64,000 bases of DNA, taken from Laetmonice hystrix. Lineage: Eukaryota. The stretch's first letter is position 1. Each line of letters opens with the position of its first letter. The stretch spans positions 21,948,001 through 22,012,000 of the forward strand of contig OZ249439.1 in assembly GCA_965235115.1 (NCBI GenBank). The letters run 5' to 3'. The translations under genes and the position numbers were made by a program. A model generated the notes under the pieces. That model did not search any database and was not told where the DNA came from. It saw only the letters and a list, made by a program, of their open reading frames with translations. Shown here one piece after another: positions 3,387 to 64,000 of this stretch.

Positions 3387-6194
3387 ATGATTATGAACAA
3401 CTCATTGTGGACAGGTGTCCTAGATATTTATTATTATATCTTGAATATCATCAAGATATATTTCAGTTCTATTCCATGTCTTCTGTCTCAAGGTTTCTGC
3501 AAGTTGAAGCAACCAAGAGGTAACAAGGCTTACTGTCAGACACGGAGTCTATCTATCTCTAACAACAGTAACACAGTACAGGCGGTGTCTTTGGACGGGC
3601 GATAATAAAAGGAAGAAACATTATAATAACTTTGAAAGTCGTTTTATGACACAGTAATCAGTATAGATCTAACATTTTTAAAGGCAGATAAGATCTAGAG
3701 ATAATATTAGTCATAGATCAGCCTTCTGTGTCCTTAGAATCTGTTTGCTGAAGATTTCAACAAAGAGGCCTGACTTGTTTAATGTTAGTTTTGATCAGTA
3801 AACTTGCATATTATGCAAGTTCCATTTTTAAAAAAAGTTCAGTGCTTTGGTTATATTTTAATCATTAATAATCTTCACTTTGCTGCAATGGATGTATTTC
3901 TACCAAGAAATAGTTAACTAGCTGTAGACTATCCTGTAGGAGGGGTTGTTTTTAATCCTACTTCAGTTTAGTATCCCCCCATTAAATTATACAAATTTAG
4001 TCTGGCCTCATGGCTATAAATAATCATCATTCAAGATATTTCAAACATTGTTTTTGTTTTTAGGGATAGATGATCAAGTTGGTGGAGAAAGAGTTGCCAT
4101 TGTGACCGGAGGAGCGAAAGGCATAGGATTTGAAATCAGCAGGCACTTGGCTAAGATTGGACTCCATGTCATCATGGGTAACCCTCTCGTGGAATGACTC
4201 AATTGTCACAGCAGGATTTAATTATCATTGTATTTCGGACAAGCAGTATGATGTTCTCTGGATAGAGATATAGTAATCTACATATACTAATTTTCCAATA
4301 ATATAGTTGTTCCGAAGAAAATATATTAAATTTGAAATACCCATTCATGTTCTCCAGGGGTGCGGGAAAATAGTCTAGGTATAGAGGCTATCCATAAAAT
4401 TAAAACTGAATTTCCTAAGGCAAAAGGTAAGTTCACGGGTTATTTTGCTTTATTGACCAAAGATTATGAGTTCTAATATTTTTGCTATCACAGGGCTGAA
4501 AAAAATATGTATTTGGCGATAGAAATTATACTGTCGGCAAATAAACTAATAATGTCTGATGAGGCTGGATGAATCTGGTGGAGAGTAGATTTAAGTGACG
4601 AGGCACAGACTGGCTCCGAGGTCAATGGTCAATGATATGGTAATTTAGATGTAGACCTTTCTTCGCTGCTTACTTCTACTTGATAAGAGGGAATGGTCTT
4701 CTGGTCATCATTTTGTTGAAAAGCACATTGTTTCAGTTGAAGCTGAGGTGATGGATTTGCGGTCCATGAAGTCGGTCAGACATTTTGTTAACAATTTCAA
4801 GTCCAGAAATCTGCCTCTACACATTCTTATCAATAATGGTAAGTGAAATATATTTCTTTAATGTAGATTAAAGAGAGTTAATAATCACCAAACAAACACT
4901 TTTTAGGAACAATCATGTACTTCACTCACTGGCTCATCTCTCAAAAGTCATGTGTCATGCAAAATGTTAGGTTTACATGTGCAATTTGGCAGATGGAAAC
5001 ATTTCTTGGTATTGAGACACAAGGTTGGGCATACTTGTTATTTTTGATTTTGCATCCCATTTTAGCTGGAGTGATGTTGGTTCCAAGGACCATCACTGAG
5101 GATGGCTATGAGGAACACTTCCAGGTCAACTACCTGGGTCACTTCCTGCTGACACGTCTCTTACTGGAAAAGTTGAAGGAAAGTGGAAGTGTAAACCGAC
5201 ACAGCCGCATCGTTAACATGTCTTCATATGTCCACTATGTGGCATCCATCGATATGAATGCTATAAATGGCAGGTAAAGAGAACTCAAAGTTTGCATATG
5301 AAGTGCTTGGTTTATAACCTTTCATAGAACCTGTTTCTGATAATGATCATTATATCCTGGGGCACCACTGTTTTATCATAGGTCAACATTGGCTTGGATG
5401 TTGCATGGGTCTGCTAAATGGTTTACTCTGGACAGCAAAAGTGAGGAAAGCGTAGAGTGAGGACTGCTATAATTTTCAAGTATGCTGGGAATATATTGTC
5501 TTGGTCTCTGTGCAGAAGAATCTTCTCTCCACATGGAGCGTATACACAGTCCAAGCTGGCACTGCACCTGTTTACCCGCTGTCTTCAGCGCCATCTGTTA
5601 TTGGACATGGCCCCAGTAATGGTGAACAGTGTCCATCCAGGAGTCGTTGACACAGATCTATTTGAACATGTAAACAAACTCGTGAAATTCCTCTCTATAC
5701 CTCTCAAACCAGTCTACAAGGTAAGCAAGTTAAGACACCCCCTCAGACGTAACATGAACCAAAATCATTTTTACAGTGCTTCATGATATATATTTAAATA
5801 GGAAGGTCATTTGAAGTTACTGCTAACCTAAGTGAATAATCATCTTCAATACCTTCATCTTTTGAAATATGTATTCCTCTTAAAAACTTCTTTTCATAGT
5901 TTTTAGTGCTTTTACTTTTAAAGAGTAATTGCTTTCTGCCCACGTAATCTGTCAGTGATAACCAGTGGAGTATTGATGTTGCAGACAGCCCGACAAGGTG
6001 CCCTCACACCTCTCTATGTGGCACTGTCTCCTGTACTGGAAGGATGTGGAGGTCGTTACTACGATAACTGTGAGGAAATCACTTCCAGTAACACATCAGA
6101 CTGTCACCTTTTACAGGACCAACTCTGGCACCTCACTGATAAAATGTGTGGACTAAACAATACACAGAACCTTTGCCGTCCAATACATAAGTAG
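3387..6194 (+). CDS. DHRSX: DHRSX-like short-chain dehydrogenase/reductase (polyprenol dehydrogenase-like), ~346 aa, 7 exons
   Basis: Exons 3387-3519 (start ATG 3387 or 3393), 4064-4177, 4358-4426, 4737-4838, 5066-5273, 5516-5720, 5985-6194; GT-AG, in phase, 1041 nt. SDR motifs TGGAKGIG, NNAG, YTQSK. GVMLVP, ESGS...SRIVNMSSYVHY and SPHGAYTQSKLAL favour DHRSX over RDH11-14 (recalled alignment, not a search). Confidence 0.85.
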
Positions 6195-14962: not shown

Positions 14963-17900
14963 TCATGTGTCCTTGAGTCGGTGAAGGCCTGTACGCACGT
15001 ACCGGACGAGGTCGAGAATTGAACTGTGTAACGTTAGACTTCCCGCCTCGTAGTCAAGCTCCTGGAAGAACTCTGTAAGGATGAACAAACGCACCATTAG
15101 TCGACACATTCACCCTTCCAACATCATCTCTAATCAAACTTCTTGTGATCTACACCACTTTTCATGGAATTGACAACCTGATACCGAGAGACAGAATTTG
15201 GCTGAAAATGGGCATTGTTACGGAGAGGGAGAGTGGCAGTATTACATACGGGTAAATTCGCTGGCCTGGCCGTCTGCTTGCTCCCAGAGTTCGTGACACT
15301 GGACCAGCGAGTTAACATGAGAGATGTAGTTCTGCGTGATCTGGTGGATTCTCTGGGGAAGTGACACGGTCGATGGTGACGACATGGACGTGCCCGCTGC
15401 TAAACTCCCGTTGGTCAGCCGGAGGTCGCCGTTACCCGAACCCTGTGGGGACAACTGTCATGTAGAACCATCAATCTGGGAAGTAGCGGAGAGCTAGGCC
15501 ACTGGCACAATATCTAAGGCCTTTATCTAACCCTTCCTCATTACTGCCATTATTACATCAACTGAATGCAGGATCATCACAAAGAATGACATATTAATCT
15601 CTGATTTGGAGAGCATAACGGTTTTGTCAATTTTGAGATTTCTGCAACATTTTAAGAAGTGTGGAATGCAGAACACATCCCTGTAATGCGGAAAGATTCA
15701 GAAGAATGTGGAAGGGTTGGACATTATGCTTGTATGAGTACAGAATCTTTGAACCGTGGACACAAAGACAGACAGTTAACCACTCCTTTATAATATTCCT
15801 CTCTTGCAATTATCACATACTGGGATCAACTTTTTCCTTTTATTTTTTTGCTTACGAATCTTTTCATTTACCTGATCCAATTTCTGACATATATCTAGCA
15901 ATAGACAAAAATCTATTTTGGAGAAATATATTTGAGAGACTGCGGGTATTCAAATCATCCAAGACCCATTTATGAACACCTGGCTCAGTCAGACCAATTT
16001 CTAGATGAAAAGTCAAAACATGACAAAGAATTGGGTAAACTGGGAGCCACTCTTAAACAAAACACTCATTCTATCCAGGCCTGATGACTGTCATTACCAT
16101 AAAACATGTCGTTCATATAGTACTCACCACAGATCCCACAGAGCCGACTGAGCCAGCTGGGGATGGGGTAGGGGACATTGGCGACGGGGTGCCCGTGCTG
16201 CGATTCCAGTTGGTTTGGTAAGGTGATGGGGCCTGTGCCTTTTGCTGGGTAGCAGACTGGGGTGAAAAATTCAAGTCCATCCAGTTACACTTATCAAAAG
16301 TACAAACTCTAAATTTCGAGTATAAAAAAATTAACAAGATTTCTGAGCCTTTGTTCGAACATATGAAAATTCTAAATATCTTTACAAAATAATAGCTGAC
16401 AGACTAGTTTGCCATTTAAGTCAGTGGTTCTATCTTTGGCATGTGAAGTCCTTTTTACAAAGCATTTGAATGCCAACCAATAGCAAAAAGAATATGCCGT
16501 GTAATCTGAGAAAGGGACGCATTAAATATCAACGGTCTTGAAACCAACCTTGTTGTGATCATCTATAACACGCTTAAACTTTGCTGTCTCGGTCTTTTTC
16601 AGCTTAAACAGCTTTAGGCAGAGCAGAGACTGGATCCGAAGGCTGAAAAGGAAAGCATATGTCGTGACCAATTTGTTTGGACTGAGAAGTAGGAAAATGT
16701 GTGGGTTTTTTTAAATTAGCACTAGACCCAATCCCCAACAAGTCGCTTTCATATTTCAGTGCTTGGCCCCCCAAAAACAAAAAACAAAAATAAAAAAACA
16801 AGACGTTATAAAAATCAGTTGCTTAAATTCTTATCAAAATTACAAAATGGAGTATCAGCTGAACAAAATTTTGGTTACTCACAAAACTCTAAGAAACCAC
16901 ACACAAATAGTCAAACCTTACAGGATGTTCGGCAGCAGGTTGTGATGCTTGCACAAAGAAGTGTAAAATGCAGGCAGTCTAGTGGGCACTTGCGGGTCAC
17001 TAAGCCCGGGGCTTCTATTGCCCCTCAGATAACTGTCCTTTATGGCCACCTGACATCACATCTTCTAGCATTACGATGACATAGTGACGTCACGAGTTCC
17101 CCAGCATTACGATGACATAGTGACGTCACGAGTTCCCTAGCATTACGATGACATAGTGACGTCACGAGTTCCCTAGCATTACGATGACATACTGACGTCA
17201 CGAGTTCCCTAACATTACGATGACATAGTGACGTCACGAGTTCCCTAACATTACGATGACATAGTGACGTCACAAGTTCCCTAGCATTACGATGACATAG
17301 TGACGTCACGAGTTCCCTAGCATTACGATGACATAGTGACGTCACGAGTTCCTTAGCATTACGATGACATAGTGACGTCACGAGTTCCCTAGCATTACGA
17401 TGACATAGTGACGTCATGAGTTCCTTAACATTACGATGACATAGTGACGTCACGAGTTCCCTAGCATTACGATGACATAGTGACGTCACGAGTTCCTTAG
17501 CATTACGATGACATAGTGACGTCACGAGTTCCCTAGCATTACGATGACATAGTGACGTCACGAGTTCCTTAACATTACGATGACATAGTGACGTCACGAG
17601 TTCCCTAGCATTACGATGACATAGTGACGTCGCGAGTATCCTAACGCTACCGTCCTTACAAGACACACTGACCATCATCATACCGAGCTTGGCTCTGGCT
17701 TCTAAATCTCGACTTCTTTAAGAGCTACAAAAGGGACCTCAAAGATTGGAGCGTTTAGACCAGCGGTTCATAACCGGGGGACATTTCCCCCTGGAGAGAA
17801 ATTTTTGGCGGTCAGAACATCTAACAATCTTTGCTTTTTCTGAAGACAGGTATAAAAATTTATTATGGCACTGCCAAGTCTTCTTACTGTAAGCGTTGCT

Positions 17901-19334
17901 TCTGAACACTATGGCTTAAAATTAAGCCAGCTCTACTAACTACCGGTACACTACAGCTCGATTCCAGTGAGGGGGGCCCTCAACAAGAGACTGCCAGTAG
18001 TAATACGCACCTTAATACTGACAATTTCTTTTCTTTATCATGGACTTCTCCATCATGACTTCCACGGAATTTATAAATATGTCTGGAAAAGAAATGACTG
18101 AAAAGGTAAACAAAGGGAGGTTGCTATCAATACAGGTTCTACAACAAGACAACACAGAAGGCAAGGCAGGACAAGACAACATGCATTCCATCAAACTCTA
18201 TACAACACATTCATTTTCTTCTTCTCACAGTTCACACAACTTTTACATTTTTGAAAACGAGATATGTTGGCATTAAATTTAGAAGATGTAATTAAATGAG
18301 CAGTGATTGTCAAAATAAATAATTCATTTTTATTTATTGTCTTAGACGACTTTTATTCAATATTACACAGTTATCTGAACTTGGAAATAAGAAACTTGAA
18401 AAATTACTGTCTGCTCATCCAAATTATTCCTTTTATTGATTTTTTTAAAAACAAAACCACAGACCTTCTGATTTTCCATCATAATAAAATGGGTTATAGC
18501 AATGAAGCTCACATAAAACACTACCAGTTGATATCAACAGACCTTCTAAAATTGATTTCCATGCTAATGCCACTATGAATATAGCCTTCTTTTTACACAC
18601 CCCTGCTACACAATACTTAATAAATGTACGACACCTCTACAATTCAGACACCAAGGCTTGCTACATGACTATTTTATGATGGTACAACCTCTTTGTGACA
18701 ATAACTGTAAGAGCAGAAAACTAAGAAACCAAATCTCAGGGTAAACTAAAACTAAATCAAGGGAATTTAAAAGGAATGCTGAACTTTGTATCTTCTAAGA
18801 AACCTTAAAATACAGCTACGTCCAAATCGCAAACATACATAAACACACTGTTGTCGTAAAGAGGTTGACCCAAAACGATATGCATATATTGGACTGACCT
18901 AATGAGTGTGTAGGTATCCTTGTACATGGTGAAGATTTTGTTGGGTTCTGAGATACGTTCGTGCTCCATAGCATTACCACACTGAATGAAGGACAGCACA
19001 GCTTCTACATACATGAGCGACTTGGCCAGTCTGTCCATCTGAAATACAAGTTTTATTCCACAATACAGTCTCAATGCAGCGAATTCATCTGGTCATTGAC
19101 CTCCATGGCGACGTCGGATGATGGCGCCACCTGGTAGCAAGCCACATCATTATTTTACGATTACTCAAACCGCCAGGTGCCAGCACCGTCAAAACACGAA
19201 TGCCATTCAACAATTCCAAACCTTGCAATTTACAAAATTTCAAGCTGACCCAGGTGTTGTGAACCCTTACCAGAGTGTCTGCCTGGTGCTTGAGTCTGCA
19301 GGCCTCGTTCAGATAGTGATCGGCACTTTCTATC
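14963..19334 (-). CDS. AFF4: AFF C-terminal homology domain (CHD) exons
   Basis: Seven exons give [42 protein letters not shown]...KLSVLSLRIQSLLCLKLFKLKK...STGTPSPMSPTPSPAGSVGS...VSLPQRIHQI...LTLHSSILDLVRYVRTGLHRL*, matching the AFF CHD consensus. Confidence 0.95.
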
Positions 19335-22300
19335 CTGTAACACGTACACATTGACATCAGTCACAATAAAGCCAACACTTACCAACGTCACAACTTGACA
19401 CATTTCATACAGGGATCTAATCATGCCATCATGAAGCTTGCAAGCTGCCTGGTACATCAATGATTACCGTGTATTTCAGACAGTGATCCTGGTTCAACCT
19501 GATCTACAAACCATCACTCGGTCCCAGAGTTAGGGGCTCTATTTGACAATATTACTGAACATTACATTCCTGCCATCACAAATATGACAGACATAGGCTT
19601 ACCAGTGACACTTCAAGGAACTTAACAACAACTTTCTAATCGTCATCGGCTAAACTGCTTCCTCATGGCGTATCCCCCGCCCCCTTTCCAAAAACACTTT
19701 TCTCATTTTCAAGGCTGCTCGATATCTAGACAGTTATTGCACTCTTTTTTAATACTAAGCACAGAATTACAGCAGTACACTCTCATAGTCATTAATACTG
19801 CCCCCCCCCCCCCCTCCCCCTCACGGACAAACCTCCAAATTTGGGACATACTTTTCGGTGTGTTCCTGCCGCCGCCACTCGTGCCTGCGGTCCGGTGGGT
19901 TGTCGCTAGACGGGCGGTCCAGGTTTGTGTCCAGACCGGCGGCCAGACTACTCCAGTGGTTGGCTGCCGGGTGACTTCCGTTAAATGTCGGACCGTCCAG
20001 GGTGTGGCTTTCTTCAACACTGTTAGGAGCATCCCAATCCATACGCATATCCTGCAGAGCAAAACGCTCCTGTCAAAATCCAGGCTCTTCTTACTTTTTA
20101 TTTCCCCTTATATCAACCACCTCACTGTCATGCTAAATGTATTTATATTTGGCAATTTTTTTTTCTGATCCCTTTAGACGGGTGTAGAATTACTGGCATG
20201 CCATCAAGGTATTCCCTTTGGGGTTCTGGCATTCGTCCATGCTGACGTCATCTAATGCTTCTTTACCAATGTAATCTAGTGCCTCATACCGAGTGATTCT
20301 AGTCTCCGCCAGCCTGAATGATAACTACACATTACTACATACAGTGTGTGATTTCTCAGACTGTTACCTCAATTATTACACTGTTACAACAGTTACACTG
20401 TTATCTCATCAATTAAACATGATGTAAGGTTTAGCCGAACATCCTACTAAATATGTACACACACAATTCTTCAATCTGAGCCTGTATGGCAATTTTCTGA
20501 TCTTTTCGTGCAAGGCTTTCCAGACATGACTACAATACAAGCAAACTCAAGTCGCCATGTATTTGAAGATCTTACCCTGAGTACAACCTTATCCCTTGAT
20601 CTCTCCCTGTCCCTGTCCCGTTTTCGCTCCTTTTCCCTGTCCCTATGTTCACGATCGCGATCATACTTGGCACGTTTACTATCACGGTTGCGGTCATGGT
20701 TTCTGTCACGGTCCCGGTCGTGGTCCCGATCGCGATCACTGTGGTGACTGGAAGAACTACTACAGCTGCCCCCACGCCGCTCTCGGTCCTCAGACATGTC
20801 GGACCTCTGGGGGTACTTCCGGTCCCATTCATGGTCGTCCTCGTGACTCGTACGCCTGCAACAACGCACCCACACAGACATTTATTATGGAGGGCAATGA
20901 GTACACAAAGTTTAAAATACACTGTCCCGTTGAAAATTATAGGGCTGACAATAGATGCAGGAGGCATTATACACACTGTCAGGGTGGAATTATTTCGTTG
21001 ACAATCAACCAGAAAACAAGCGGTCCATTTTACTTCACAGTTGTGTAACCTTGGCTTGGTTTCGCTGTGAAGATTTTAGTTGGCGACACGGTGTAAAACC
21101 ACACTCTTTCAAAAATTACATGGTTGATAATCAGTCCTAGACAGGTGGCTTAAAACACATTGTTACGGTATACGGTTAATAATCAGTCCTATACAGGTTG
21201 CTTAAAACACATTGTCACGGTATACGGCTGGGAATCAGTCCTAAACATGAGCTATTAAAAAAATCTCAATATGAACTTGTCCTCTACAGACGAAGACCAG
21301 CGTAAAATGGTCCCGAATCACTCTCATTAGTATCCTCACGAGAACAGTGAATTGTTTGAGACAGAGGGCCTCAGTAACCAACAGGGCATAGAAACCACCA
21401 CTCCTCACTCCCTTACAACAGAATGTATACATCTCCCGACCTATCTTCTTTTTATGAAGAAAGATATCACACTCCATGTTAAAAGATGTTGAGAATCAGC
21501 AGGTGAATGTTCCTGTGAGCAGTGTGTGACAATTGCTACCACATAAACTGTGGTGGACTCATCTGCTCCCAGAGCAGATGGAAACAGAAGTTTGGACGTC
21601 TGATGATTCGCCCGTGCGCAGGTAATAGACCCCATACATAAAATATTAATTTTTCTAAAGGTGACTTCTTCATTTCTTTTTTAGCGTTTTTGAGTTTTCT
21701 GAATAGTCGAGTTTGGGCTTTCCCCTCACCCCCCCCCCCCCCCCCAGCTTTGCTCTGTATTACTTCCCCATTGCAGATGACTATTTTTAAATCTATTCGA
21801 GCTGATACTATGTAAAATTCTGAAAAATGCTTCACTCCTTGGCAAGGGAAAGCCCAGTATAGCCATGGCAGGTAGGTTGTTGCCGCCCCCCCCCCCCCCC
21901 CCCCCGACAACTGGCCCATTTGTCACCAGGGTCCCCCCACTTGCCGACAGTCACAGGCTCCGCCATGCTACCAGAATCCCTATATATCTTTTTCCACCTC
22001 AAGTTTAGACCTTGACAAGTCTGAGATAGCCACAACTCGTAATTTCACTGCCAAACCTTTATACATGTTTTGTAATCTCAAACACGGATTGGGAGGTTAC
22101 TGTGGCATACAGACCCAAGTTGAAGGAAAAAGGTAGTACCTGTCTAATATTGCTTCAGGTCACAACTGGAGGGTGACTGTGTTGTACAGGCACAGGTCAC
22201 GAAGATACACAAAAACAGGTCACAACTGAAGGTTAGCTGAGAGGTATATAGGCACAGGTCAGAGGCCGCCTGTGGTATAAAAACCAAGTCAGGTAGGCCT

Positions 22301-25300
22301 TGACATCCGATACCTCTAATGGCCACGTGAACATATATCTAAAATACCACAAACTATACAAACTTTCAACCAAGAACCACTTCATGTATATAACCAGAAA
22401 CCCCGGCAAGGCATCTGTATGATGAAACAGAAAAGAAACGTGAAAAAAACTATTCTTCAGTGGTTATCATGCCACGGCCTCAAATTTAAGCTGGTGTTTT
22501 CCCCCTTTCTTCTTCATTTCCATCACAATCACAACGTTACAGTTGCGAACAGGAACATTAATAAAAATGCATTTTTTCATCAGCGACCTTGTCAGCTGGC
22601 GCCTTGAAACTCCGGGAGGTAAACTGGCATTTCACTCTGATTTACGGATGGCACAGTTCGGCCCCAGCCAGACCACCTGTGGTATTCTGCCAGGTTCTTG
22701 CTCAACTTTCAACTGCTGCAGTTTCAGTGAAAAGTTACTTGGGCCAACAGTGCCCATAACCTACACCGTCCAACAGTACTAGCTGCCTGGGTGTGTTAAC
22801 CAGCCCAACAGTACTAGTTGCCTGGGTGGGTTAACCAGCCAGCAGTACCATTTACCTGTTCAGGTTAACCAGCCCAAAATACCTGTTCATGTTAAACACT
22901 ACCAGCCAACAGTACCAGTTAACTTTGTAGGTTCTTGCCCTTGAAGATCATGCAAATGGCCACAAGACTTCCATCCTAATGCCTGCCACAAACTACACGA
23001 TTCTGACTGGTTTCAAGTCGTGATCTCCCACAGACTATACGCTCAGGTTCCTAGCAATCACATAGCCATAGGGCACACACACCACGCAATGAGAATCGCT
23101 GTTGTAACCTGGCCCCAATATCACAAGATTCTCTACGAAACAACAAGAAATTTTGTCCCATCATACAGTGTGAGGCTGTTTATGATAGCACAATTTTCAG
23201 GCAAGCGGATTGCGACGTGCAGAATCGTATCATTTTGAACATGTTCAAAATTTTACGGTTGCATGACATCCTATCATAAAGAATCGTGGACAATCGCATC
23301 TTAGATCTTATCGTACCATGTGAGGCAGCCTTAAGGCTGGCATACACAGAACGACAAGCACGGACTAAAGACTCCAATGAACTAGTTGTCTTGAGTCCGG
23401 AGGAGTCTTTAGTCCTAAAGACTCGTCCGGACTGGGGCGCATACACACAACGACAGGACCGGACAAGTCTGTTCTGTCGTGGCCGTCTAGCCATGCGATC
23501 CTGGTGGCAGCTGGTGGAACCTCTGCACCACCGTACCGGAAGTAAGTGGCGAGGCCTTCTGATTGGTTGTCTCCGTTGCGGACTCTCACGGACTTAAAAC
23601 AGGGACACATACACACAGAGACTGCCACGGACACGACAGGTTGTCCGCGACAGTCCGCTCAAGTTTTCTGACACCGTCAGGAAACTCATGACAACTGCGG
23701 ACAGCTCCGGACAACAAGAGACTGGTGTCTCAAGGGTGCATACACAGAACCACAGTGACGGACAAGACTCGCACAGACTTGTCTTTAGGAGCTAAAGACT
23801 AGTCCATTGCTGTCTTTACCATCCCCTAACGATCACAGACAGATCACAACAGCATGCACACCAACCAAGTCGCGTCGTAAGACCTGATTTTCGGTCTTCA
23901 GTTTGACTGATGTAGGACCAGTCCCAAAAAGTGTCGCACTAAACCAGTCCTACGGCAGTCCTACATTTCACTCCTTTGGCACACTTTGGCGCAAACTTTG
24001 CACCATGACCATGGAAACTGGGACCTGATGTTAATTCAAAATCGCATGGGCGACTGGAGAAGATTTACTCCTGCTTAGTTTGGGGTGAACTCCCCCATCA
24101 TTTGAAAAAGGCTTCCTTGATAAAACAATTTTACAGTAATTTTTGTTTAGTCTTTATACAACTTAACTAATTCTCCATCGTAGATAACAAGAAAGTACTT
24201 ACTCTCTTTCTGATACATCATCTGAGCTGCGTTTTGGAGTACCCCTATTTGGCGTATTCCTACTTGGCGTGCTGCGTGATGGCGTATTCCTATTCAAGGA
24301 GCTTCTCTGTTCTGTCCGTGGCCTCTTGTGGCTATCTTTATTATAGTCCGACTCCGGTTTGCGTTTCGGAATCTTGGTTTGTGGAGGCTTTCGGTCTTCA
24401 GTTTTAATTATATTTGCAAGAATATTGTCGGCTGATATGGCGTTCATTGCCAGCGAGCTGATCGCTCCTACATCTTTGGGCAACAAGAGGGCCGCCTGGT
24501 GACCATGTTGTAAGTGACTACCTGAAACACTGGGTTCCATTTTAATGTCTGTGACCACTTTGTCTATGTGGCACTGTTGGGGTTCAACAACAGCCACTGG
24601 TTTTTTGGGTGCGCCGTCAACGTCACGAGGCGGCGGAGGGGGTAGCAAACTGCACAATGGTAGCGGCACGGTTGTGGCAGCAGCAGTGGATGAGGCCGTC
24701 AATGCCGGGGGCAGCTGACTGAGTAATGAGAGATCTAAATGCACCATGACACTGGCTTTACCGTCGACGTAAGTTAGTCCTGGTACTCTCGTTGTTGAAG
24801 TTTCAGCAGCAGCGGGCGCAGACAGTTCCACAAGTGGCAAAGACTTGGACGCCACTATGGATGTTGCTGTACTAGTTGTGCACGGACCCATGGAAACTGA
24901 TGAAACTGATGGCTGAGTTCTGGCAGGGGATGCAGCAGGGGATGAAGCTCGTGATGAGGCACGGGACGAGCCAGACGAGTCGGACGATTCTGACTCTGAT
25001 CCAGCGGACTCGGAATCCGACTCTGATGAGGAGGATGCCGGGGAGGAGGGCTCCACGGCTGTGACTGGCTGTGATGATGATGACGATAGCAATGATGATG
25101 ACTGAAGAGGCACATTCGTTGCCTCAGAGGCGACTTCTGATGACGGCAGACGTGACAATGGCGGTGAAGCTGTCCTCATCATCATCATCCCTTTCCTTAC
25201 CTCGACGACGTCAGGTGTCGGAATGGGAGAAAGGAGAGGACCAGGAGCCGTGAGTTCGGTGGACGGCCCAATCACTGCATTGAACACATCCTCCAGGTCA

Positions 25301-28300
25301 ATGGTACTGCTTGCCGAGAGGTTTCCATCATGCCGTGGGCTCCGCTGCTGTGGCGGAGGCCGCTGCTGCCGTGCTGGGGGAGCCGGCAGAGACACGGTGG
25401 GCTCTCGGGCAGGCTGCAACTGCTGACCCTTCTGTTTAGTCGAAGTACTGCCAGTAGAACTTGTTCGAACTTTGCTCCGACTGCTCTTGCTGGATTTGGG
25501 CGTAGTAGGCCCTTGCTTGGTCAAGTCACTACTTACTTTCACCTGGGGTGAGACGTTCACGACATCAACATCCTCATCAGAACTATCTGAGGAGGAGGTG
25601 AGGAATTCCCGAGACTTTGCCTGTGGTTTACGGCTGTTTGACTTTGGTGTGGAGCTGCCAGATTTTCGTTCAGATGAACGTGGTGGAGTTTTGACTGAAC
25701 GGGGGGAACTTTTGGCCCCAGACTTTGAACCATTTTGTCTGGAAGTAGATCGCTGTTTGTGCTCTTTGGTTGGCGATACCTTCACAGTAGTTGTAGCAGT
25801 ACTGGTGTTGGCTTTCTGAGGTGAGGGTTTGGGAGACTTTCCAGCCTCGCGTTCAGAGGATGCTGCTGTTGTTTTTGAATTCTTGCGAGAGCGCCGACCA
25901 GGCGACCGCCCAACACTACTCCTACTACTTCCAGCACTTTTAACACTGCTTGGCGACTTCATTTCCCTCCCGCTAGGGGGTGCCTTGTCACTCTGATTCC
26001 TACTGCTGCTCCTAGGGGGAGTCCCAGCATCAGACCTAGTCTTAGATATGGTGAGGAAGATTCCCTTATCTCCCATCTTAACACTGCTCACTGTATCAGA
26101 CTTCATGGCCGCTTCCTTACTGACTGCTTTGTTCTCCATCATCTCATCTTTGATTGGATCAGGAATGTTCTCTTGAAATAATATATCGATGAGGCCATCG
26201 TTCTTGTCGATTGTTCGGGCATCCCCGCCTCCACCGTGCGGGCCTGCGGCCATGGCTTCTGAACCTGGTAGGCCTCCTCCTGGCATGTCATCCTTCCAGT
26301 TACACAGTGCCCAACTCCGGGATGACTGCTGAAAGTAGACAGAGATACCGTTAGAAAACTCCTATTTTATCTCCTCTGGGTTGAACATGGATTCATCACG
26401 TTTTCACTAAAAGGAACACCATTCATGAAAGTTATTCTTTATTAGTTCCTACTCTGTATACATGTATGTCTCGACAGAAATAAACAGACCTAACGAGACT
26501 CTTATGTCTTTCTATAGGAAGTAGGTAGACTTACAGAACTCATAGGCTTCAAAAGATCGGTAAACCAGGGGTTTTCAGTGGACCAGGCCTTACAATTTCA
26601 GATGGTGGCTAAATATGGGTTTTTGACAGGCTGGCCGTCTGATGTCTGATATAGAGCTTCCCAAGGTGCGCACAGCTCCACAACGTCTTAAAACTGCAAA
26701 TGATCACACCAATGCACCAGCCATCTTATGGCGTAAAGAACCCTTCAATGGTACGCCAGAGAAACCCATTACTGGTCGTCTCAACTGTGCTTGGAAACAC
26801 AGCTTCCAATCTAGGAGTGGGGAACAACTCACTGCACAGGCAATCTGATCTCCAATATTTGACAAGAACAAACTAATAGGAAAAGACAACATTTGGGCTT
26901 CGGAGACATCTCAGGTTTCTTACTCGGCAATATTTGTCATCAAAGACGACAGGAAGAAGATTCAATCAATTTTTACTGTGGGCCCTAAAGGACGCTTGGA
27001 AGGTTTCCCTAACCATGAAGACCACCAATGAAAATGAGATGCTGGATCAAAGAACTGTCATGTTGTACTTCTGGGCGACGGGGGGGGGGAGTGCTGAGTG
27101 TTGGAATAGAGCAACAACCAGGTCGGAACCTCAACCAGGAGTGTTGGAAAAAAGTGTCATACTGTAAAGGTGGAACCAGTCAGTAACACTGCATCAACCA
27201 GTACATAGTTGTAACAGGCGAGGTGTTATATTGTGAGGAGGGGGGCAACTAGAAACTGTCAGGCTGGGGGACACCGACCAGTATGATGTCACTACGCTGT
27301 GTGTGTGTGTGTGTGGGGGGGGGCCCTCCCCCCAGCCAGCCCAAAGTACTTCTAGCCTAACACCACTTGCCCATTATCCTCCAGTAGTCACCCACCCGCC
27401 CCATCAGCCCCACTCCAACCCCACCCCATCCCTGCCTGAGAGCGGATGTGCCTGCTAGAGTGCGCCAGCCCTGTCAACCTTGTAGGGCCTCGTATGCTGA
27501 AGACAAGCATTTGCCATTTGCGTCAGCCTCGGGGGCCCGGTGCTCAAGGCTATGATGGATTGCCGAGGTAGTCTTCAGGGATAGGCCAGGGGTCAAGAGA
27601 ACGCAGGCACCGTGCGGCCCTAACCCGGCCAGGCCATGACGTCAAAGCGGCCAGTGTTGTACCGCTTGGCGGCAGCACAGCCTAATTGCAGGGCAGCGGG
27701 CCTACCAGATTGGCGGGCAAAGGGATAGCCACCTCTTTTTATGACCTTTCCATGGAGAACAATGTCAGTTGGTTTTTCCTTTTTTAACGACTTTTTGATC
27801 AGCCACTAAATCATTGTCACAACACTGGTGAAATAAATCATTTATTTTTCAAAAACTCCTGGGGTGAGATGTGTGTGTGTGTGTGGGGGGGGGGGGGGTG
27901 TCAGTAAAGGACCCATGACAGGAATAGCCCTGGGTGATACCATAAGGCACATGTACAGAGTAAACACTATACCTGAGGGTATATCGCCCAGCATTCCTAT
28001 ACAGTCAGTTGACTCACCAGTACTGAATATAACGAAACATCCCTGCCCCACCTTTACACCCTACCCACTCCCCCTGTAAAGAGTAAACTTACATGGATGC
28101 CACACAATGATACTGAAATAGCAGCCAGCAATTCCATGGAAAGCATCTAGACCCTCAATAGATGTCCTCAGAAACACTCATTGCCTACTCAGTCACACTC
28201 AGAAATGAAGACTGGCAACACAATGATTGATTCATTTCCCTCCTTTCCAACGACTACCATCCATCCACATCCTTCCCAAAACTGTTTTCTTAAATACCCA

Positions 28301-34300: not shown

Positions 34301-37300
34301 CGCATCAATACAGCCCGACTGACAAATTTACTGTCTGATCAGACAACACTCTCACTATCAGACATCACTACTGTCCGATTAGACAACACTATCAGACAAC
34401 ACTACTGCCTGGTCAGACAACACTACTGCCTGGTCCGACAACACTACTGCCTGGTCAGACAACACTACTGCCTGATCAGACAACACTACTGCCTGGTCAG
34501 ACAATCCTGATCCCCGAACAGTCAGATCGGGCACCACTAGTACCTCATTAGACAGTATCCCACAATTGCCTGTTCGTCCCCTAGTTCATACTTTAAAGCT
34601 GGTCACACCCCGCCTTTTCTAGCTTTGATATAAACATCTCCATCTGAGGTCAATGCATGGATCCCATCATATCACGCATTGTCACTCAGTTGCTCTGTCC
34701 GTATATTATATAATACCAACGAGACAGACTATATTATACTAGACTGTCCTGTCACACCAAACTGGCTTTCAGTGTCCCAGGTTTAACTGGTGCCCACTTG
34801 AGCAGCCGTAACCGGAGCCGGGTTTCCGTCACAGGTCGTCAGACAGTCGGCCAGGTAGTATACTCTTCACAAAGACCCCGACCACCACCACCACCCGCTC
34901 CAGCAGCATGCCGTGGGTTGGTAGGTGGCCGTGCGTGACACCGCCCCATTACCCGCCCCCAACCCCCCTAACCCTGCAGGAACCGACGCCAGACTGCTTG
35001 CCATGAGCTCCGCCTGCACACAGACTTTCCTTTTATCAGCCAAAGTACCATCTTTGTCGGAAACAATGGCCCATTGTGTCCTACACCGTGCCCAGCTGGC
35101 CCATGTGGGCACTCCTTCGATCCCTATACCAAAGACGCCAGTTTCATTTAGAATATGCTGGTCCCATGAAAAACATCCGAATGATAAAAAAAACAATAAG
35201 AAAAGCAAACACTTCACCACGCGGTTAAACGGCACTGGAAGTATACCATTGTGATCTGCCATAATGGTATGATTATATCTGGAAACTGATAAACCTTTAC
35301 ATGCATACAAACAACTAGACAGGCTCTCGATTACCTCTACCCACCGACTTATACCGCTTCATCCTACAGCACTGTGTCAGTCAACCTTCTCTCACAATAA
35401 CCGCTCCATTAAGTGAAAGAAACGCCCTGTCACCGACCGTTAGACGCCATGCCCTAACTGCGGCACCCTGGAGAAACCTGGGGCCCACTCCAATACTCGA
35501 GATGTCTCTCACAATCCAAGGATACAAACCTGGGGCCCACTCCAATACTCGAGACGTCTCTCACAATCCAAGGATACAAACCTGGGGCCCACTCCAATAC
35601 TCGAGACGTCTCTCACAATCCAAGGATACAAACCGTGGGGCCCACTCTAATACTAGAGACGTCTCTCACAATCCAAGGATACAAACCGTGGGGCCCACTC
35701 CAATACTAGAGACGTCTCTCACAATCCAAGGATACAAACCGTGGGGCCCACTCCAATACTAGAGACGTCTCTCACAATCCAAGGATACAAACCGTGGGGC
35801 CCACTCCAATACTCGAGATGTCTCTCACAATCCAAGGATACAAACCTGGAGCCCACTCTAATACTCGAGATGTCTCTCACAATCCAAGGATACAAACCTG
35901 GGGCCCACTCCAATACTAGAGACGTCTCTCACAATCCAAGGATACAAACCGTGGGGCCCACTCCAATACTAGAGACGTCTCTCACAATCCAAGGATACAA
36001 ACCGTGGGGCCCACTCCAATACTCGAGATGTCTCTCACAATCCAAGGATACAAACCGTGGGGCCCACTCTAATACTAGAGACGTCTCTCACAATCCAAGG
36101 ATACAAACCGTGGGGCCCACTCCAATACTAGAGACGTCTCTCACAATCCAAGGATACAAACCGTGGGGCCCACTCTAATACTAGAGACGTCTCTCACAAT
36201 CCAAGGATACAAACCGTGGGGCCCACTCCAATACTAGAGACGTCTCTCACAATCCAAGGATACAAACCGTGGGGCCCACTCCAATACTCGAGATGTCTCT
36301 CACAATCCAAGGATACAAACCGTGGGGCCCACTCCAATACTCGAGATGTCTCTCACAATCCAAGGATACAAACCGTGGGGCCCACTCCAATACTCGAGAT
36401 GTCTCTCACAATCCAAGGATACAAACCTGGGGCCCACTCCAATACTCGAGATGTCTCTCACAATCCAAGGATACAAACCGTGGGGCCCACTCCAATACTA
36501 GAGACGTCTCTCACAATCCAAGGATACAAACCGTGGGACCCACTCCAATACTAGAGACGTCTCTCACAATCCAAGGATACAAACCTGGAGCCCACTCTAA
36601 TACTCGAGACGTCTCTCACAATCCAAGGATACAAACCGTGGGGCCCACTCCAATACTAGAGACGTCTCTCACAGTCCAAGGATACAAACCGCGGGGCCCA
36701 TTCCAATACTCGAGATGTCTCTCACAATCCAAGGATACAAACCGTGGGGCCCACTCCAATACTAGAGACGTCTCTCACAATCCAAGGATACAAACCGTGG
36801 GGCCCACTCCAATACTAGAGACGTCTCTCACAATCCAAGGATACAAACCGTGGGGCCCACTCCAATACTCGAGATGTCTCTCACAATCCAAGGATACAAA
36901 CCTGGAGCCCACTCTAATACTCGAGATGTCTCTCACAATCCAAGGATACAAACCTGGGGCCCACTCCAATACTAGAGACGTCTCTCACAATCCAAGGATA
37001 CAAACCGTGGGGCCCACTCCAATACTAGAGACGTCTCTCACAATCCAAGGATACAAACCGTGGGGCCCACTCCAATACTCGAGATGTCTCTCACAATCCA
37101 AGGATACAAACCGTGGGGCCCACTCTAATACTAGAGACGTCTCTCACAATCCAAGGATACAAACCGTGGGGCCCACTCCAATACTAGAGACGTCTCTCAC
37201 AATCCAAGGATACAAACCGTGGGGCCCACTCTAATACTAGAGACGTCTCTCACAATCCAAGGATACAAACCGTGGGGCCCACTCCAATACTAGAGACGTC

Positions 37301-40300
37301 TCTCACAATCCAAGGATACAAACCGTGGGGCCCACTCCAATACTCGAGATGTCTCTCACAATCCAAGGATACAAACCGTGGGGCCCACTCCAATACTCGA
37401 GATGTCTCTCACAATCCAAGGATACAAACCGTGGGGCCCACTCCAATACTCGAGATGTCTCTCACAATCCAAGGATACAAACCTGGGGCCCACTCCAATA
37501 CTCGAGATGTCTCTCACAATCCAAGGATACAAACCGTGGGGCCCACTCCAATACTAGAGACGTCTCTCACAATCCAAGGATACAAACCGTGGGACCCACT
37601 CCAATACTAGAGACGTCTCTCACAATCCAAGGATACAAACCTGGAGCCCACTCTAATACTCGAGACGTCTCTCACAATCCAAGGATACAAACCGTGGGGC
37701 CCACTCCAATACTAGAGACGTCTCTCACAGTCCAAGGATACAAACCGCGGGGCCCATTCCAATACTCGAGATGTCTCTCACAATCCAAGGATACAAACCG
37801 TGGGGCCCACTCCAATACTAGAGACGTCTCTCACAATCCAAGGATACAAACCGTGGGGCCCACTCCAATACTCGAAATGTCTCTCACAATCCAAGGATAC
37901 AAACCGTGGGGCCCACTCCAATACTAGAGACGTCTCTCACAATCCAAGGATACAAACCGTGGGGCCCACTCCAATACTCGAGATGTCTCTCACAATCCAA
38001 GGATACAAACCTGGGGCCCACTCCAATACTCGAGATGTCTCTCACAATCCAAGGATACAAACCCTGGGGCCCACTCCAATACTCGAGATGTCTCTCACAA
38101 TCCAAGGATACAAACCGTGGGGCCCACTCCAATACTCGAGACGTCTCTCACAATCCAAGGATACAAACCGTGGGGCCCACTCCAATACTAGAGACGTCTC
38201 TCACAATCCAAGGATACAAACCGTGGGGCCCACTCCAATACTCGAAATGTCTCTCACAATCCAAGGATACAAACCGTGGGGCCCACTCCAATACTCGAGA
38301 CGTCTCTCACAATCCAAGGATACAAACCGTGGGGCCCACTCCAATACTCGAGATGTCTCTCACAATCCAAGGATACAAACCGTGGGGCCCACTTCAATAC
38401 TAGAGACGTCTCTCACAATCCAAGGATACAAACCGTGGGGCCCACTCCAATACTCGAAATGTCTCTCACAATCCAAGGATACAAACCGTGGGGCCCACTC
38501 CAATACTAGAGACGTCTCTCACAATCCAAGGATACAAACCGTGGGGCCCACTCCAATACTAGAGACGTCTCTCACAATCCAAGGATACAAACCTGGGGCC
38601 CACTCCAATACTCGAGACGTCTCTCACAATCCAAGGATACAAACCTGGGGCCCACTCCAATACTAGAGACGTCTCTCACAATCCAAGGATACAAACCGTG
38701 GGGCCCACTCCAATACTCGAAATGTCTCTCACAATCCAAGGATACAAACCGTGGGGCCCACTCCAATACTAGAGACGTCTCTCACAATCCAAGGATACAA
38801 ACCGTGGGGCCCACTCCAATACTCGAGATGTCTCTCACAATCCAAGGATACAAACCGTGGGGCCCACTCCAATACTCGAGATGTCTCTCACAATCCAAGG
38901 ATACAAACCGTGGGGCCCACTTCAATACTAGAGACGTCTCTCACAATCCAAGGATACAAACCGTGGGGCCCACTCCAATACTAGAGACGTCTCTCACAAT
39001 CCAAGGATACAAACCTGGGGCCCACTTCAATACTCGAGACGTCTCTCACAATCCAAGGATACAAACCGTGGGGCTCACTCCAATACTCGAGATGTCTCTC
39101 ACAATCCAAGGATACAAACCGTGGGGCCCACTCCAATACTCTAGATGTCTCTCACAATCCAAGGATACAAACCTGGGGCCCACTCCAATACTCGAGATGT
39201 CTCTCACAATCCAAGGATACAAACCTGGGGCCCACTCCAATACTCGAGATGTCTCTCACAATCCAAGGATACAAACCGTGGGGCCCACTCCAATACTCGA
39301 GACGTCTCTCACAATCCAAGGATACAAACCTGGGGCCCACTCCAATACTCGAGATGTCTCTCACAATCCAAGGATACAAACCGTGGGGCCCACTTCAATA
39401 CTAGAGACGTCTCTCACAATCCAAGGATACAAACCTGGGGCCCACTCCAATACTAGAGACGTCTCTCACAATCCAAGGATACAAACCGTGGGGCCCACTC
39501 CAATACTCGAGACGTCTCTCACAATCCAAGGATACAAACCGTGGGGCCCACTCCAATACTAGAGACGTCTCTCACAATCCAAGGATACAAACCTGGGGCC
39601 CACTCCAATACTAGAGACGTCTCTCACAATCCAAGGATACAAACCTGGGGCCCACTCCAATACTAGAGACGTCTCTCACAATCCAAGGATACAAACCGTG
39701 GGGCCCACTCCAATACTCTAGATGTCTCTCACAATCCAAGGATACAACCCTGACAAAAAGACAACCTCCCACCGTTCCACGATTCTAATATTCAGGGTAA
39801 TAACTCACTCACATCTAGGCTCCACCTGCTGCTCTCGGCAGTCGATGTTGAACAAACCCAGACTAAGAATATACACCAACTTATGACCTATGCAATCCCA
39901 GTAAGATTTTTTTTCAGGTGCAGGTTTGTCACAGGCCTAACACTGTCCGCCTGCCTTGGGTGTATTTTCCACACCACTCACCTATTGTTTGCAGTGGTTT
40001 ACCGCCGTACATTTGAGATACGGCTCAACCCTCAGAACTGGATCTTAATGGGTCCATTATATCGAGTGGTTGACTGACCAGGAATGAATCCCAGCAGGAG
40101 ACTATTTGATATATCTCCCCCCCCCCCCCCCACCTCCTTCTTACCTGTGTACCAGACATCCGCAATGACTCGACTGTATACAATGTAATTACAGCTCTTC
40201 ACTAGCGTTTCTCCTTAATTCTCTCCTTTACATTACTCGCCAAACTCACATATGGAGCTAGGTTTTAAATGCGGTTAAAACTCTACTGAGAGATAACACA

Positions 40301-63789: not shown

Positions 63790-63922
63790 TCATAGCATAT
63801 ATACAGTAGTGTAGGAAGGAAAAAAATATTGGGGGGGGGGGCAGAAGTGACGTCATAAAAGCATATATACAGTAGTGTAGGAAGGAAAAAAATATTGGGG
63901 GGGGGGCAGAAGTGACGTCATA
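63790..63922. repeat. ~65-bp tandem duplication containing a CRE
   Basis: GCATATATACAGTAGTGTAGGAAGGAAAAAAATATTG(n)CAGAAGTGACGTCATA x2. Confidence 0.9.
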
Positions 63923-64000
63923 ATGACTTACTCCTATGCTTTTGCATTGAGCCATGCGGTCATTTTATAAATATTGGGGGGAGGGGGGGCAGCAGCCCCC

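What the first reader, a model, noticed from the sequence alone, without database searches (positions are those of the whole stretch)
17069..17645. Intronic array of 15 perfect CREs on a 36-bp period
Fifteen of 16 units contain TGACGTCA, usually as the 10-bp palindrome GTGACGTCAC. Substitutions fall in the flanks (two are CpG-type: CATGAG, CACAAG), and only the terminal unit breaks the core. A homotypic CREB/ATF cluster of this size in the gene for a transcription-elongation scaffold could be a copy-number-tunable, methylation-sensitive enhancer or a bZIP sponge. Core conservation may also simply reflect recent expansion.
Basis: partly seen in the sequence, partly recalled or inferred. Interest (0 to 1): 0.7.

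Follow-up and report, generated by a model that had tools for sequence, protein, structure and literature searches.

The report
Young intronic minisatellite carrying CRE motifs
This is a real, recently expanded 36-bp tandem repeat inside a spliced intron of an AFF-family gene, but its 15 perfect CRE motifs look like an ordinary by-product of a genome that is rich in both minisatellites and this motif, with no sign of a selected regulatory element.

Summary
There are 16 units of 36 bp (17065-17644), 15 with exact TGACGTCA and 13 as GTGACGTCAC. Short-read k-mer depth supports the copy number. RNA-derived contigs show the array lies in a spliced intron (16643-18010, minus strand) between AFF C-terminal-homology-domain exons.

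The enhancer or sponge reading gains no support:
- The 15 bases 5' of the core are as invariant as the core (P 0.22-0.37 for core sparing).
- Two 144-bp blocks differ at one base, so expansion is very recent.
- The orthologous intron of a related species has no array, no unit and no CRE.
- TGACGTCA occurs 92,376 times in this genome, six times a matched CpG palindrome. The array holds 0.016% of sites, so it cannot act as a sponge.
- Arrays are very dense (about 120/Mb at periods 28-58). Random seeding predicts about 0.8 CRE-bearing arrays per Mb; I observe about 1.1 (CI 0.65-1.85).

It is not part of a dispersed transposon. First readers of this scan flagged similar CRE arrays on other pieces of this genome.

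Best reading: a neutral, lineage-specific VNTR. Binding, methylation and polymorphism remain untested. The genome-wide excess of TGACGTCA is unexplained.

The parts
17065..17644 (.). 36-bp minisatellite, 16 units (15.9 by TRF), no indels
   Evidence: TRF; unit table; copy number supported by k-mer depth
17085..17596 (.). Run of 15 exact TGACGTCA cores at 36-bp spacing (first 17085-17092, last 17589-17596); 13 read GTGACGTCAC
17609..17644 (.). Terminal, most diverged unit (4 differences); core reads TGACGTCG at 17625-17632
17321..17608 (.). Two adjacent 144-bp (4-unit) blocks, 17321-17464 and 17465-17608, differing at a single base: the most recent duplication
   Evidence: the variant pattern at columns 32 and 35
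16643..18010 (-). Spliced intron (1,368 bp, GT..AG on the minus strand) holding the array. The array starts 365 nt after the 5' splice site and ends 426 nt before the 3' splice site
   Evidence: Joint 16642->18011 in a contig of run X4; boundaries read; distances
18011..18100 (-). Upstream coding exon of the AFF C-terminal homology region. The 3' end is fixed by the RNA joint; the 5' end is approximate
   Evidence: 88% identical block in the related species
16541..16642 (-). Downstream coding exon. The 5' end is fixed by the RNA joint; the 3' end is approximate, from conservation
18808..19092 (-). Open frame containing a CHD exon (Pfam AFF4_CHD positions 36-84, 44.8 bits); the RNA joint places the exon's 5' end at 19038
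14966..16403 (-). Three further CHD exon fragments (16116-16403, 15245-15457, 14966-15109; profile positions 139-258) forming the 3' end of the coding region
24199..26286 (-). Large serine-rich exon of the same gene (695-aa open frame), used to find the orthologue

Best explanation
The array is a young, lineage-specific, locus-specific minisatellite (a probable VNTR). It arose when one 36-bp seed that happened to contain a full CRE palindrome was amplified by replication slippage or unequal exchange inside an intron of an expressed AFF-family gene. It is removed with the intron and does not touch splice signals or coding sequence. The perfect conservation of the CRE core reflects the youth and block-wise homogenisation of the array. 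It does not indicate selection for bZIP binding. Shown here: the structure, single-locus status, intron position, absence from the orthologue, recent block duplication, and the genome-wide base rates that make such arrays expected. Inferred: the slippage or unequal-exchange mechanism, neutrality, and probable gene-body methylation, which would keep CREB off.
For: Structure: 16 units, 95% identity, no indels. Two 144-bp blocks differ at 1 of 144 bases, and mismatch is lower at lags 72, 144 and 216 than at 36, 108 and 180. The terminal unit is the most diverged. No core-specific constraint: 9 variable columns, all at column 15 or columns 23-35, and columns 0-14 are invariant like the core. P(0 of 6 variable columns in the core) = 0.22 and P(at most 1 of 9) = 0.37. 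Lineage-specific: the interval between the conserved exon blocks is 1,329 bp here and 651 bp in the related species (L025), which has no array, no recognisable unit and no TGACGTCA there. None of the minisatellites in the two AFF loci are shared. Base rates: TGACGTCA has 92,376 sites (147/Mb) against 15,314 for the matched palindrome TGTCGACA. There are 24 arrays of period 28-58 in a random 200 kb. The expected density of CRE-bearing arrays is 0.76-0.79/Mb, against about 1.14/Mb observed (16 loci in 14.05 Mb, CI 0.65-1.85). The share of sites lying in triple arrays is lower for the CRE (2.2%) than for controls (4.2-6.8%). Not a TE: unit and both flanks are single-copy, with no TIRs. Context: the intron flanks and gene body are CpG-depleted (o/e 0.36-0.59) and a DNMT-type domain is encoded. 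No contig of the RNA-like run X4 lies in the array or its intron flanks.
Against: Fifteen consensus CREs in 540 bp would be a strong bZIP target if unmethylated and accessible. Multimerised CREs drive transcription in reporters (established knowledge), and CREB1, ATF4 and JUN bind this octamer in vitro (PMC3668366). The array still has 47 CpGs (o/e 1.59) with only two CpG-type decays, which fits either youth or lack of methylation. Observed CRE-array density is nominally 1.5 times the null. Lack of conservation does not exclude a lineage-specific function. Only one individual and one low-coverage RNA-like run were available.
Confidence: 0.75

Rival explanations
1. The array is a functional, lineage-specific intronic enhancer. 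Unmethylated CRE cores recruit CREB/ATF/Jun-type bZIP dimers, and copy number sets the strength of cAMP- or stress-responsive transcription of the AFF gene or a neighbour.
For: There are 15 perfect consensus sites, 13 of them as the 10-bp palindrome. CREB1, ATF4, JUN and JUND bind TGAC|GTCA (PMC3668366). Human minisatellite VNTRs are associated with expression differences (PMC8096271). The array retains its CpGs (o/e 1.59).
Against: The core is no better conserved than 15 neighbouring bases. The array is absent from the orthologous intron. Its frequency in the genome matches random seeding. It sits in a CpG-depleted gene body of an expressed gene, in a genome that encodes a DNMT domain, and methylated CREs are not bound by CREB1 (PMC3668366). 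No RNA signal comes from the array (low coverage).
Confidence: 0.14
2. CRE/ATF sites act as recombination or instability hot spots, as Atf1-Pcr1 does at the CRE-like M26 site in fission yeast, so units that contain a CRE expand preferentially. On this reading the CRE is the minisatellite's 'core' in the mechanistic sense.
For: ATF/CREB sites activate meiotic recombination in S. pombe (PMC2396409, PMC9775316). Many unrelated minisatellite units in this genome carry TGACGTCA. CRE-array loci are 4-11 times denser than arrays with matched palindromes.
Against: After normalising for motif abundance the effect vanishes. The share of sites lying in triple arrays is 2.2% for the CRE against 4.2-6.8% for controls, and observed density falls within the CI of the random-seeding expectation. 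None of 36 arrays in a random 200 kb carries a CRE.
Confidence: 0.06
3. The array is the internal or subterminal repeat of a transposable element, like the EnSpm end built from CpG palindromes that was reported elsewhere in this genome.
For: Other dispersed repeats in this genome carry paired CREs (L021/L022, L024/L032).
Against: A 144-bp query, a 26-nt unit pattern with up to 2 mismatches, and both 460-bp flanks match only this locus in 627 Mb. No terminal inverted repeats bracket it; the only pair found spans a coding exon.
Confidence: 0.03
4. The array is a bZIP 'sponge' that titrates CREB/ATF factors away from other targets.
For: Only the local density of perfect sites.
Against: The array holds 15 of 92,376 perfect TGACGTCA sites in the genome, or 0.016%, so it cannot measurably change the free factor concentration.
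Confidence: 0.01

Closest known systems
Intronic and promoter minisatellite VNTRs of animal genomes (e.g. the human genome-wide VNTR sets, PMC8096271)
   Same: Head-to-tail units of tens of bp, locus-specific, intronic, with higher-order block duplications and a diverged edge unit. Units can contain transcription-factor motifs.
   Different: No polymorphism or expression data exist here. The host genome is far denser in such arrays (36 in a random 200 kb), so any single array carries less prior weight.
Multimerised CRE reporters and natural CREB-target CREs
   Same: The same 8-bp consensus TGACGTCA bound by CREB1, ATF4 and JUN (PMC3668366), in tandem with short spacers as in synthetic CRE reporters (my own knowledge).
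   Different: Natural functional CREs are typically promoter-proximal, unmethylated and conserved (my own knowledge, plus PMC3668366 for methylation). This array is deep in the 3' part of a gene body, in CpG-depleted surroundings, and is not conserved.
HTLV-1 LTR 21-bp Tax-responsive repeats
   Same: Short tandem-like repeats, each centred on a CRE-like core that recruits CREB/ATF (my own knowledge).
   Different: Those are three imperfect repeats in a viral promoter with a dedicated viral co-activator. Nothing viral or promoter-like is present here.
S. pombe ade6-M26 / CRE-like recombination hot spots (PMC2396409, PMC9775316)
   Same: An ATF/CREB-type site with a chromosomal function other than transcription. 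It offers a conceivable link between the CRE and repeat instability.
   Different: M26 is a single site in a yeast. Here the propensity normalised for motif abundance gives no sign that CREs promote arrays.
Transposon subterminal arrays of CpG palindromes in the same genome
   Same: Arrays of a short CpG-centred palindrome.
   Different: This array has unique flanks, no TIRs and no other copies.

Membership tests
Minisatellite / VNTR | Head-to-tail tandem repeat with a unit of about 10-100 bp | tested here: met
   Period 36, 15.9 copies, 95% matches, no indels
Minisatellite / VNTR | Locus-specific (not a dispersed element or a large satellite) | tested here: met
   Unit and flanks match only this locus in 627 Mb
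Minisatellite / VNTR | Copy number varies among individuals | not testable with these tools
   Only one sample holds the locus. K-mer contigs break inside the array. No match in metagenome contigs.
Functional CREB/ATF response element | Consensus TGACGTCA | tested here: met
   15 exact sites
Functional CREB/ATF response element | Central CpG unmethylated and site occupied by a bZIP factor | not testable with these tools
   No methylation or binding data. Context is a CpG-depleted gene body (o/e 0.36-0.59), a DNMT domain is encoded, and methylation blocks CREB1 (PMC3668366).
Functional CREB/ATF response element | Sequence constraint on the core relative to neighbouring bases | tested here: not met
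   Core sparing P = 0.22-0.37; the 15 bases 5' of the core are equally invariant
Functional CREB/ATF response element | Conservation at the orthologous position | tested here: not met
   The related species' intron is 678 bp shorter and has no array and no TGACGTCA
Functional CREB/ATF response element | Promoter-proximal position or local transcription start | tested here: not met
   The array lies 365 nt inside an intron between 3' coding exons. No X4 contig lies in or next to it, though coverage is low.
Transposable-element internal or subterminal repeat | Multiple dispersed copies with shared flanks; TIRs or TSDs | tested here: not met
   Single-copy; no bracketing inverted repeats
AF4/FMR2 (AFF) gene as host | C-terminal homology domain (Pfam AFF4_CHD) | tested here: met
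   Five collinear exon fragments cover profile positions 15-258, four of them above the 24-bit cut-off. Human AFF4 CHD structures 6kn5, 6k7p and 6r80 match at E = 1e-6.
AF4/FMR2 (AFF) gene as host | N-terminal AF-4 domain (PF05110) | tested here: inconclusive
   No hit in the genome-wide six-frame scan or on the large exons. Exon-by-exon scoring of a low-complexity family is weak, and I built no joined model.
M26-type ATF/CREB recombination hot spot | Raised recombination or instability dependent on the CRE-like site | not testable with these tools
   Indirect test only: the share of CRE sites lying in arrays is not above that of control motifs

The most novel reading that the evidence does not exclude
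The AFF array may be one visible instance of a genome-wide peculiarity. The full CRE palindrome is about 9 times over its Markov expectation and 6 times a matched CpG palindrome. Its sites are mostly dispersed in unrelated contexts and outnumber their own CpG-decay products, and about 700 minisatellites carry the motif. If an active process creates or protects TGACGTCA in this lineage, these arrays would together form a copy-number-variable CRE network. Such a process could be bZIP occupancy shielding sites from methylation-driven decay, or ATF/CREB-directed recombination.
Probability: 0.1. Interest if true: 0.6.

Novelty: new member of a known kind. Interest (0 to 1): 0.2.

Why it matters
As a single locus it matters little. 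It is one more minisatellite in a genome where such arrays fill roughly a tenth of the sequence, and nothing ties it to AFF regulation. The useful results are the base rates. In this genome a phased run of perfect CREs is expected about once per megabase by chance. The several CRE arrays that first readers flagged elsewhere in this genome should therefore be judged against that null and not one by one. What might matter is the unexplained genome-wide excess of TGACGTCA. If it is real biology and not repeat history, it would be a rare case of a CpG-containing transcription-factor palindrome being maintained at high density outside promoters.

Tried and rejected
1. Dispersed TE piece. A 144-bp BLAST query, a 26-nt unit pattern with up to 2 mismatches, and both flanks hit only this locus. 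There are no TIRs.

2. Minisatellites of this genome are generally built around long palindromes, so that the CRE would be a structural core. Rejected: across 44 arrays the longest palindrome averages 4.9 nt against 5.1 in shuffles, and palindromes of 10 nt or more number 3 against 1.9 expected, P = 0.27.

3. The CRE is intrinsically prone to sit in arrays. Rejected after normalising for abundance: 2.2% against 4.2-6.8% for controls.

4. Intronic RNA structure from 16 self-complementary decamers. MFE is -175 kcal/mol against -178 for shuffles, z = +0.41.

5. Decayed older units in the flanks that would show core decay. Alignment scores are not above shuffles, P = 0.27 and 0.19.

6. The 213-225-aa open frame across the array on the gene's strand. 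This is a by-product of a 12-codon unit without stops. All three frames between the exon and the array contain stops, and the Pfam hits are all below cut-off.

7. Dispersed CREs sit in CpG-island-like neighbourhoods. Not so: median CpG o/e is 0.78 against 0.71, p = 0.67.

8. A second allele from metagenome contigs: no match.

10. My first guess that 17742-17915 was an exon was wrong. The alignment and the RNA joint place the exons at about 18011-18100 and 16541-16642.

11. One search failed on a mistyped reference and was repeated.

I searched exons one at a time by reference and built no joined spliced protein. I did not determine the species.

Full report
**Observation.** The sequence at 17065-17644 is a clean 36-bp tandem array. 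TRF gives 15.9 copies, 95% matches, no indels and a score of 1055. Exact TGACGTCA occurs 15 times from 17085 to 17589 at strict 36-bp spacing, and 13 of these sites read GTGACGTCAC. Laying the 16 units in register shows 9 variable columns of 36:
- Column 15 lies immediately 5' of the core.
- Column 23 is the last core base and changes only in the terminal unit, giving TGACGTCG.
- The other variable columns are 24, 25, 29, 30, 32, 33 and 35.

Short-read contigs from the only sample that holds the locus break at the array, as k-mer assemblies do. In-array unitig depth over flank depth is 6.2 and 7.5 in X1 and 5.8 and 7.4 in X3. These ratios match the reference 31-mer multiplicities of 5.3 and 7.4, so the assembled copy number is sound.

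**Context.** The host gene runs on the minus strand. Five open-frame fragments hit Pfam AFF4_CHD in collinear order: profile positions 15-37 at 19088-19360, 36-84 at 18808-19092, 139-176 at 16116-16403, 173-221 at 15245-15457 and 224-258 at 14966-15109. Four of them are above the curated cut-off. The strongest fragment aligns to human AFF4 CHD structures (6kn5, 6k7p, 6r80) at E = 1e-6 and about 50% identity. The N-terminal AF-4 family gave no hit, which I treat as inconclusive. Run X4 behaves as RNA-derived. One contig joins 16642 to 18011 (1,368 bp skipped, CT..AC ends, GT..AG on the minus strand) and another joins 19038 to 19271. The array therefore lies in a spliced intron (16643-18010) of an expressed AFF-family gene, 365 nt from the 5' splice site and 426 nt from the 3' splice site. 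No X4 contig lies in the array or in its intron flanks, although exon coverage is only 1-5 fold. I searched exons one by one by reference and built no joined protein model.

**Is the core protected?** No. All substitutions fall at column 15 or columns 23-35, and the 15 bases 5' of the core (columns 0-14) are exactly as invariant as the 8-base core. With 6 variable columns in units 1-15, the chance that none hits the core is 0.22. With all 9 columns and one core hit, it is 0.37. The variants at columns 32 and 35 form a repeating four-unit pattern. The blocks 17321-17464 and 17465-17608 differ at one base in 144, and mismatch is lower at lags 72, 144 and 216 than at 36, 108 and 180. The array has therefore grown by very recent block duplication, which alone explains the uniform cores. 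CpG-type changes (2 events on 96 CpG bases) are no more frequent than other changes (at least 7 on 480 bases), so the array itself says nothing about methylation.

**Is it part of a dispersed element?** No. Four searches matched only this locus in the 627-Mb assembly: a 144-bp query, a 26-nt unit pattern allowing two mismatches, and the 465-bp and 463-bp flanks. No inverted repeats bracket the array; the only pair found spans a coding exon.

**Is it conserved?** No. The large serine-rich exon (24199-26286, minus) found a single relative, P0001, on a 443-kb ENA contig. Exon blocks align at 70-90% identity. The blocks flanking the array (window 18168-17981 and 16652-16541) are 1,329 bp apart here and 651 bp apart in the relative. 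That interval in the relative has no array, no recognisable unit and no TGACGTCA. Both species have several minisatellites in their AFF introns, and none is shared in sequence or position, so turnover is fast.

**Genome-wide base rates.** This part changes the reading most.

| Motif | Single sites | Triples at 20-50 bp gaps | Share of sites in triples | Array loci on contig 1 |
|---|---|---|---|---|
| TGACGTCA (CRE) | 92,376 (147/Mb) | 2,051 | 2.2% | 16 in 14.05 Mb |
| TGTCGACA (matched CpG palindrome) | 15,314 | 638 | 4.2% | 5 in 48.6 Mb |
| ACTGCAGT (CRE reversed) | 17,515 | 864 | 4.9% | not counted |
| ACAGCTGT (control reversed) | 14,178 | 970 | 6.8% | not counted |
| TCACGTGA (E-box palindrome) | not counted | 627 | not available | 7 in 23.1 Mb |

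GTGACGTCAC occurs 9,918 times against 3,308 for its reverse. The 16 CRE loci have unrelated units of 28-53 bp. CRE arrays are thus 4-11 times denser than the palindrome controls. Normalised for motif abundance, however, the CRE is less often found in arrays than any control. A random 200-kb sample holds 36 arrays of period 15-100, of which 24 have periods 28-58, giving about 120/Mb. Multiplying by a mean unit of 45 bp and the motif density predicts 0.76-0.79 CRE-bearing arrays per Mb. I observe 1.14 per Mb, with a 95% CI of 0.65-1.85. A phased run of perfect CREs is therefore an expected by-product of random seeding in this genome. First readers of this scan independently flagged such arrays on other pieces of this genome (s1-344679, s1-349262, s1-342822), in line with this count. 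The sponge idea fails on arithmetic, because the array holds 0.016% of the perfect sites.

**Other ideas tested:**
- **Palindrome cores.** I asked whether minisatellites here are generally built around long palindromes, since a 53-bp, 81-copy array in the window carries GAGACGTCTC and an array in the relative carries a 14-nt palindrome. They are not.
- **RNA structure.** The intronic RNA folds no better than shuffles.
- **Decayed edge units.** The flanks do not contain significantly unit-like, decayed copies.

**Would CREB bind?** CREB1, ATF4, JUN and JUND bind TGAC|GTCA. CpG methylation inhibits that binding, and in mouse cells no methylated canonical CRE was occupied by CREB1 (PMC3668366). 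Here the intron flanks and the gene body are CpG-depleted (o/e 0.36, 0.59 and 0.59) while the array is at 1.59. The genome also encodes a DNMT-type catalytic domain. I infer that the gene body is germline-methylated and that the array is CpG-rich only because a three-CpG unit was amplified recently. If so, the sites are probably methylated and unbound. This is inference, not measurement.

**Verdict.** The most likely explanation (0.75) is a neutral, young, lineage-specific intronic minisatellite whose CRE content is incidental. A lineage-specific enhancer remains possible (0.14), and CRE-driven instability, TE origin and sponge readings are unlikely. Novelty: a new member of a known kind.

**Residual puzzle.** The puzzle lies in the genome and not in the locus:
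- TGACGTCA is 9 times over its Markov-1 expectation in an unbiased sample (24 against 2.7).
- The other same-composition CpG-centred palindromes have 1-6 sites each, with one at 15.
- The CRE sites lie mostly in unrelated contexts and are not in CpG-richer neighbourhoods.
- They outnumber their CpG-decay products, TGACATCA at 7 and TGATGTCA at 9.

**Limits.** The species was not identified.

Noticed in passing
G000 genome-wide; sample loci L026-L045: The full CRE palindrome TGACGTCA is strongly over-represented: 92,376 sites against 15,314 for a matched CpG palindrome, and 24 against a Markov-1 expectation of 2.7 in a random 200 kb. Sites are mostly dispersed in unrelated contexts, are not in CpG-richer surroundings, and outnumber their CpG-decay products. 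Unexplained.
   Followed up: partly
window 35474-39747: A 4.3-kb minisatellite of 81 copies of a 53-bp unit with a 475-bp (9-unit) higher-order period. Each unit carries the 10-nt palindrome GAGACGTCTC. It lies upstream of, or in a 5' intron of, the AFF gene.
   Followed up: no
window 63794-63923: A 66-bp unit repeated twice (98% identical), each copy carrying AGTGACGTCATAA after a G-run. This is a second CRE-bearing repeat in the same window.
   Followed up: no
window 1-64000 and L026-L045: Minisatellite load is extreme. There are 12 merged arrays covering 8,377 of 64,000 bases in the window, and 36 arrays (period 15-100, at least 3 copies) in a random 200 kb.
   Followed up: partly
L021:343-380 and L022:378-415; L024:406-434, 799-806, 2223-2251; L032:284: Two dispersed repeat families carry CREs. 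One has two GTGACGTCAC sites 30 bp apart (L021 and L022 are inverted copies). Another has CCTGTGACGTCAC, sometimes followed by a second CRE 13 bp on.
   Followed up: no
L025:9593-9845: In the related species, a 22-23-bp unit repeated 11 times sits just upstream of the large AFF exon. Each unit holds the 14-nt palindrome GTGGCGGCCGCCAC. It is absent from the window's orthologous position.
   Followed up: no
window 16499 and 15552-19451: Contigs of runs X2 and X3 carry a 6-bp insertion (AAAGTA) after 16499 and several SNPs that X1 lacks, although all are listed as one sample. These are probably heterozygous alleles, at about 0.3% differences over 4 kb.
   Followed up: no
window 20571-20864 (minus): An Arg/Asp/Glu-rich open frame (RDRDRD-type low complexity) conserved at 77% with L025:17115-17390. 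It is probably another AFF coding exon without a Pfam match.
   Followed up: no
window 4915-5277 (plus): An open frame with a weak short-chain dehydrogenase match (adh_short, E = 8e-4, below cut-off). It is probably an exon of a neighbouring SDR gene.
   Followed up: no
G000:C8:20811893-20812099 (minus): An exon-sized match to the C5 cytosine DNA methyltransferase domain (PF00145, 49 bits), showing that the genome encodes a DNMT-type enzyme.
   Followed up: no
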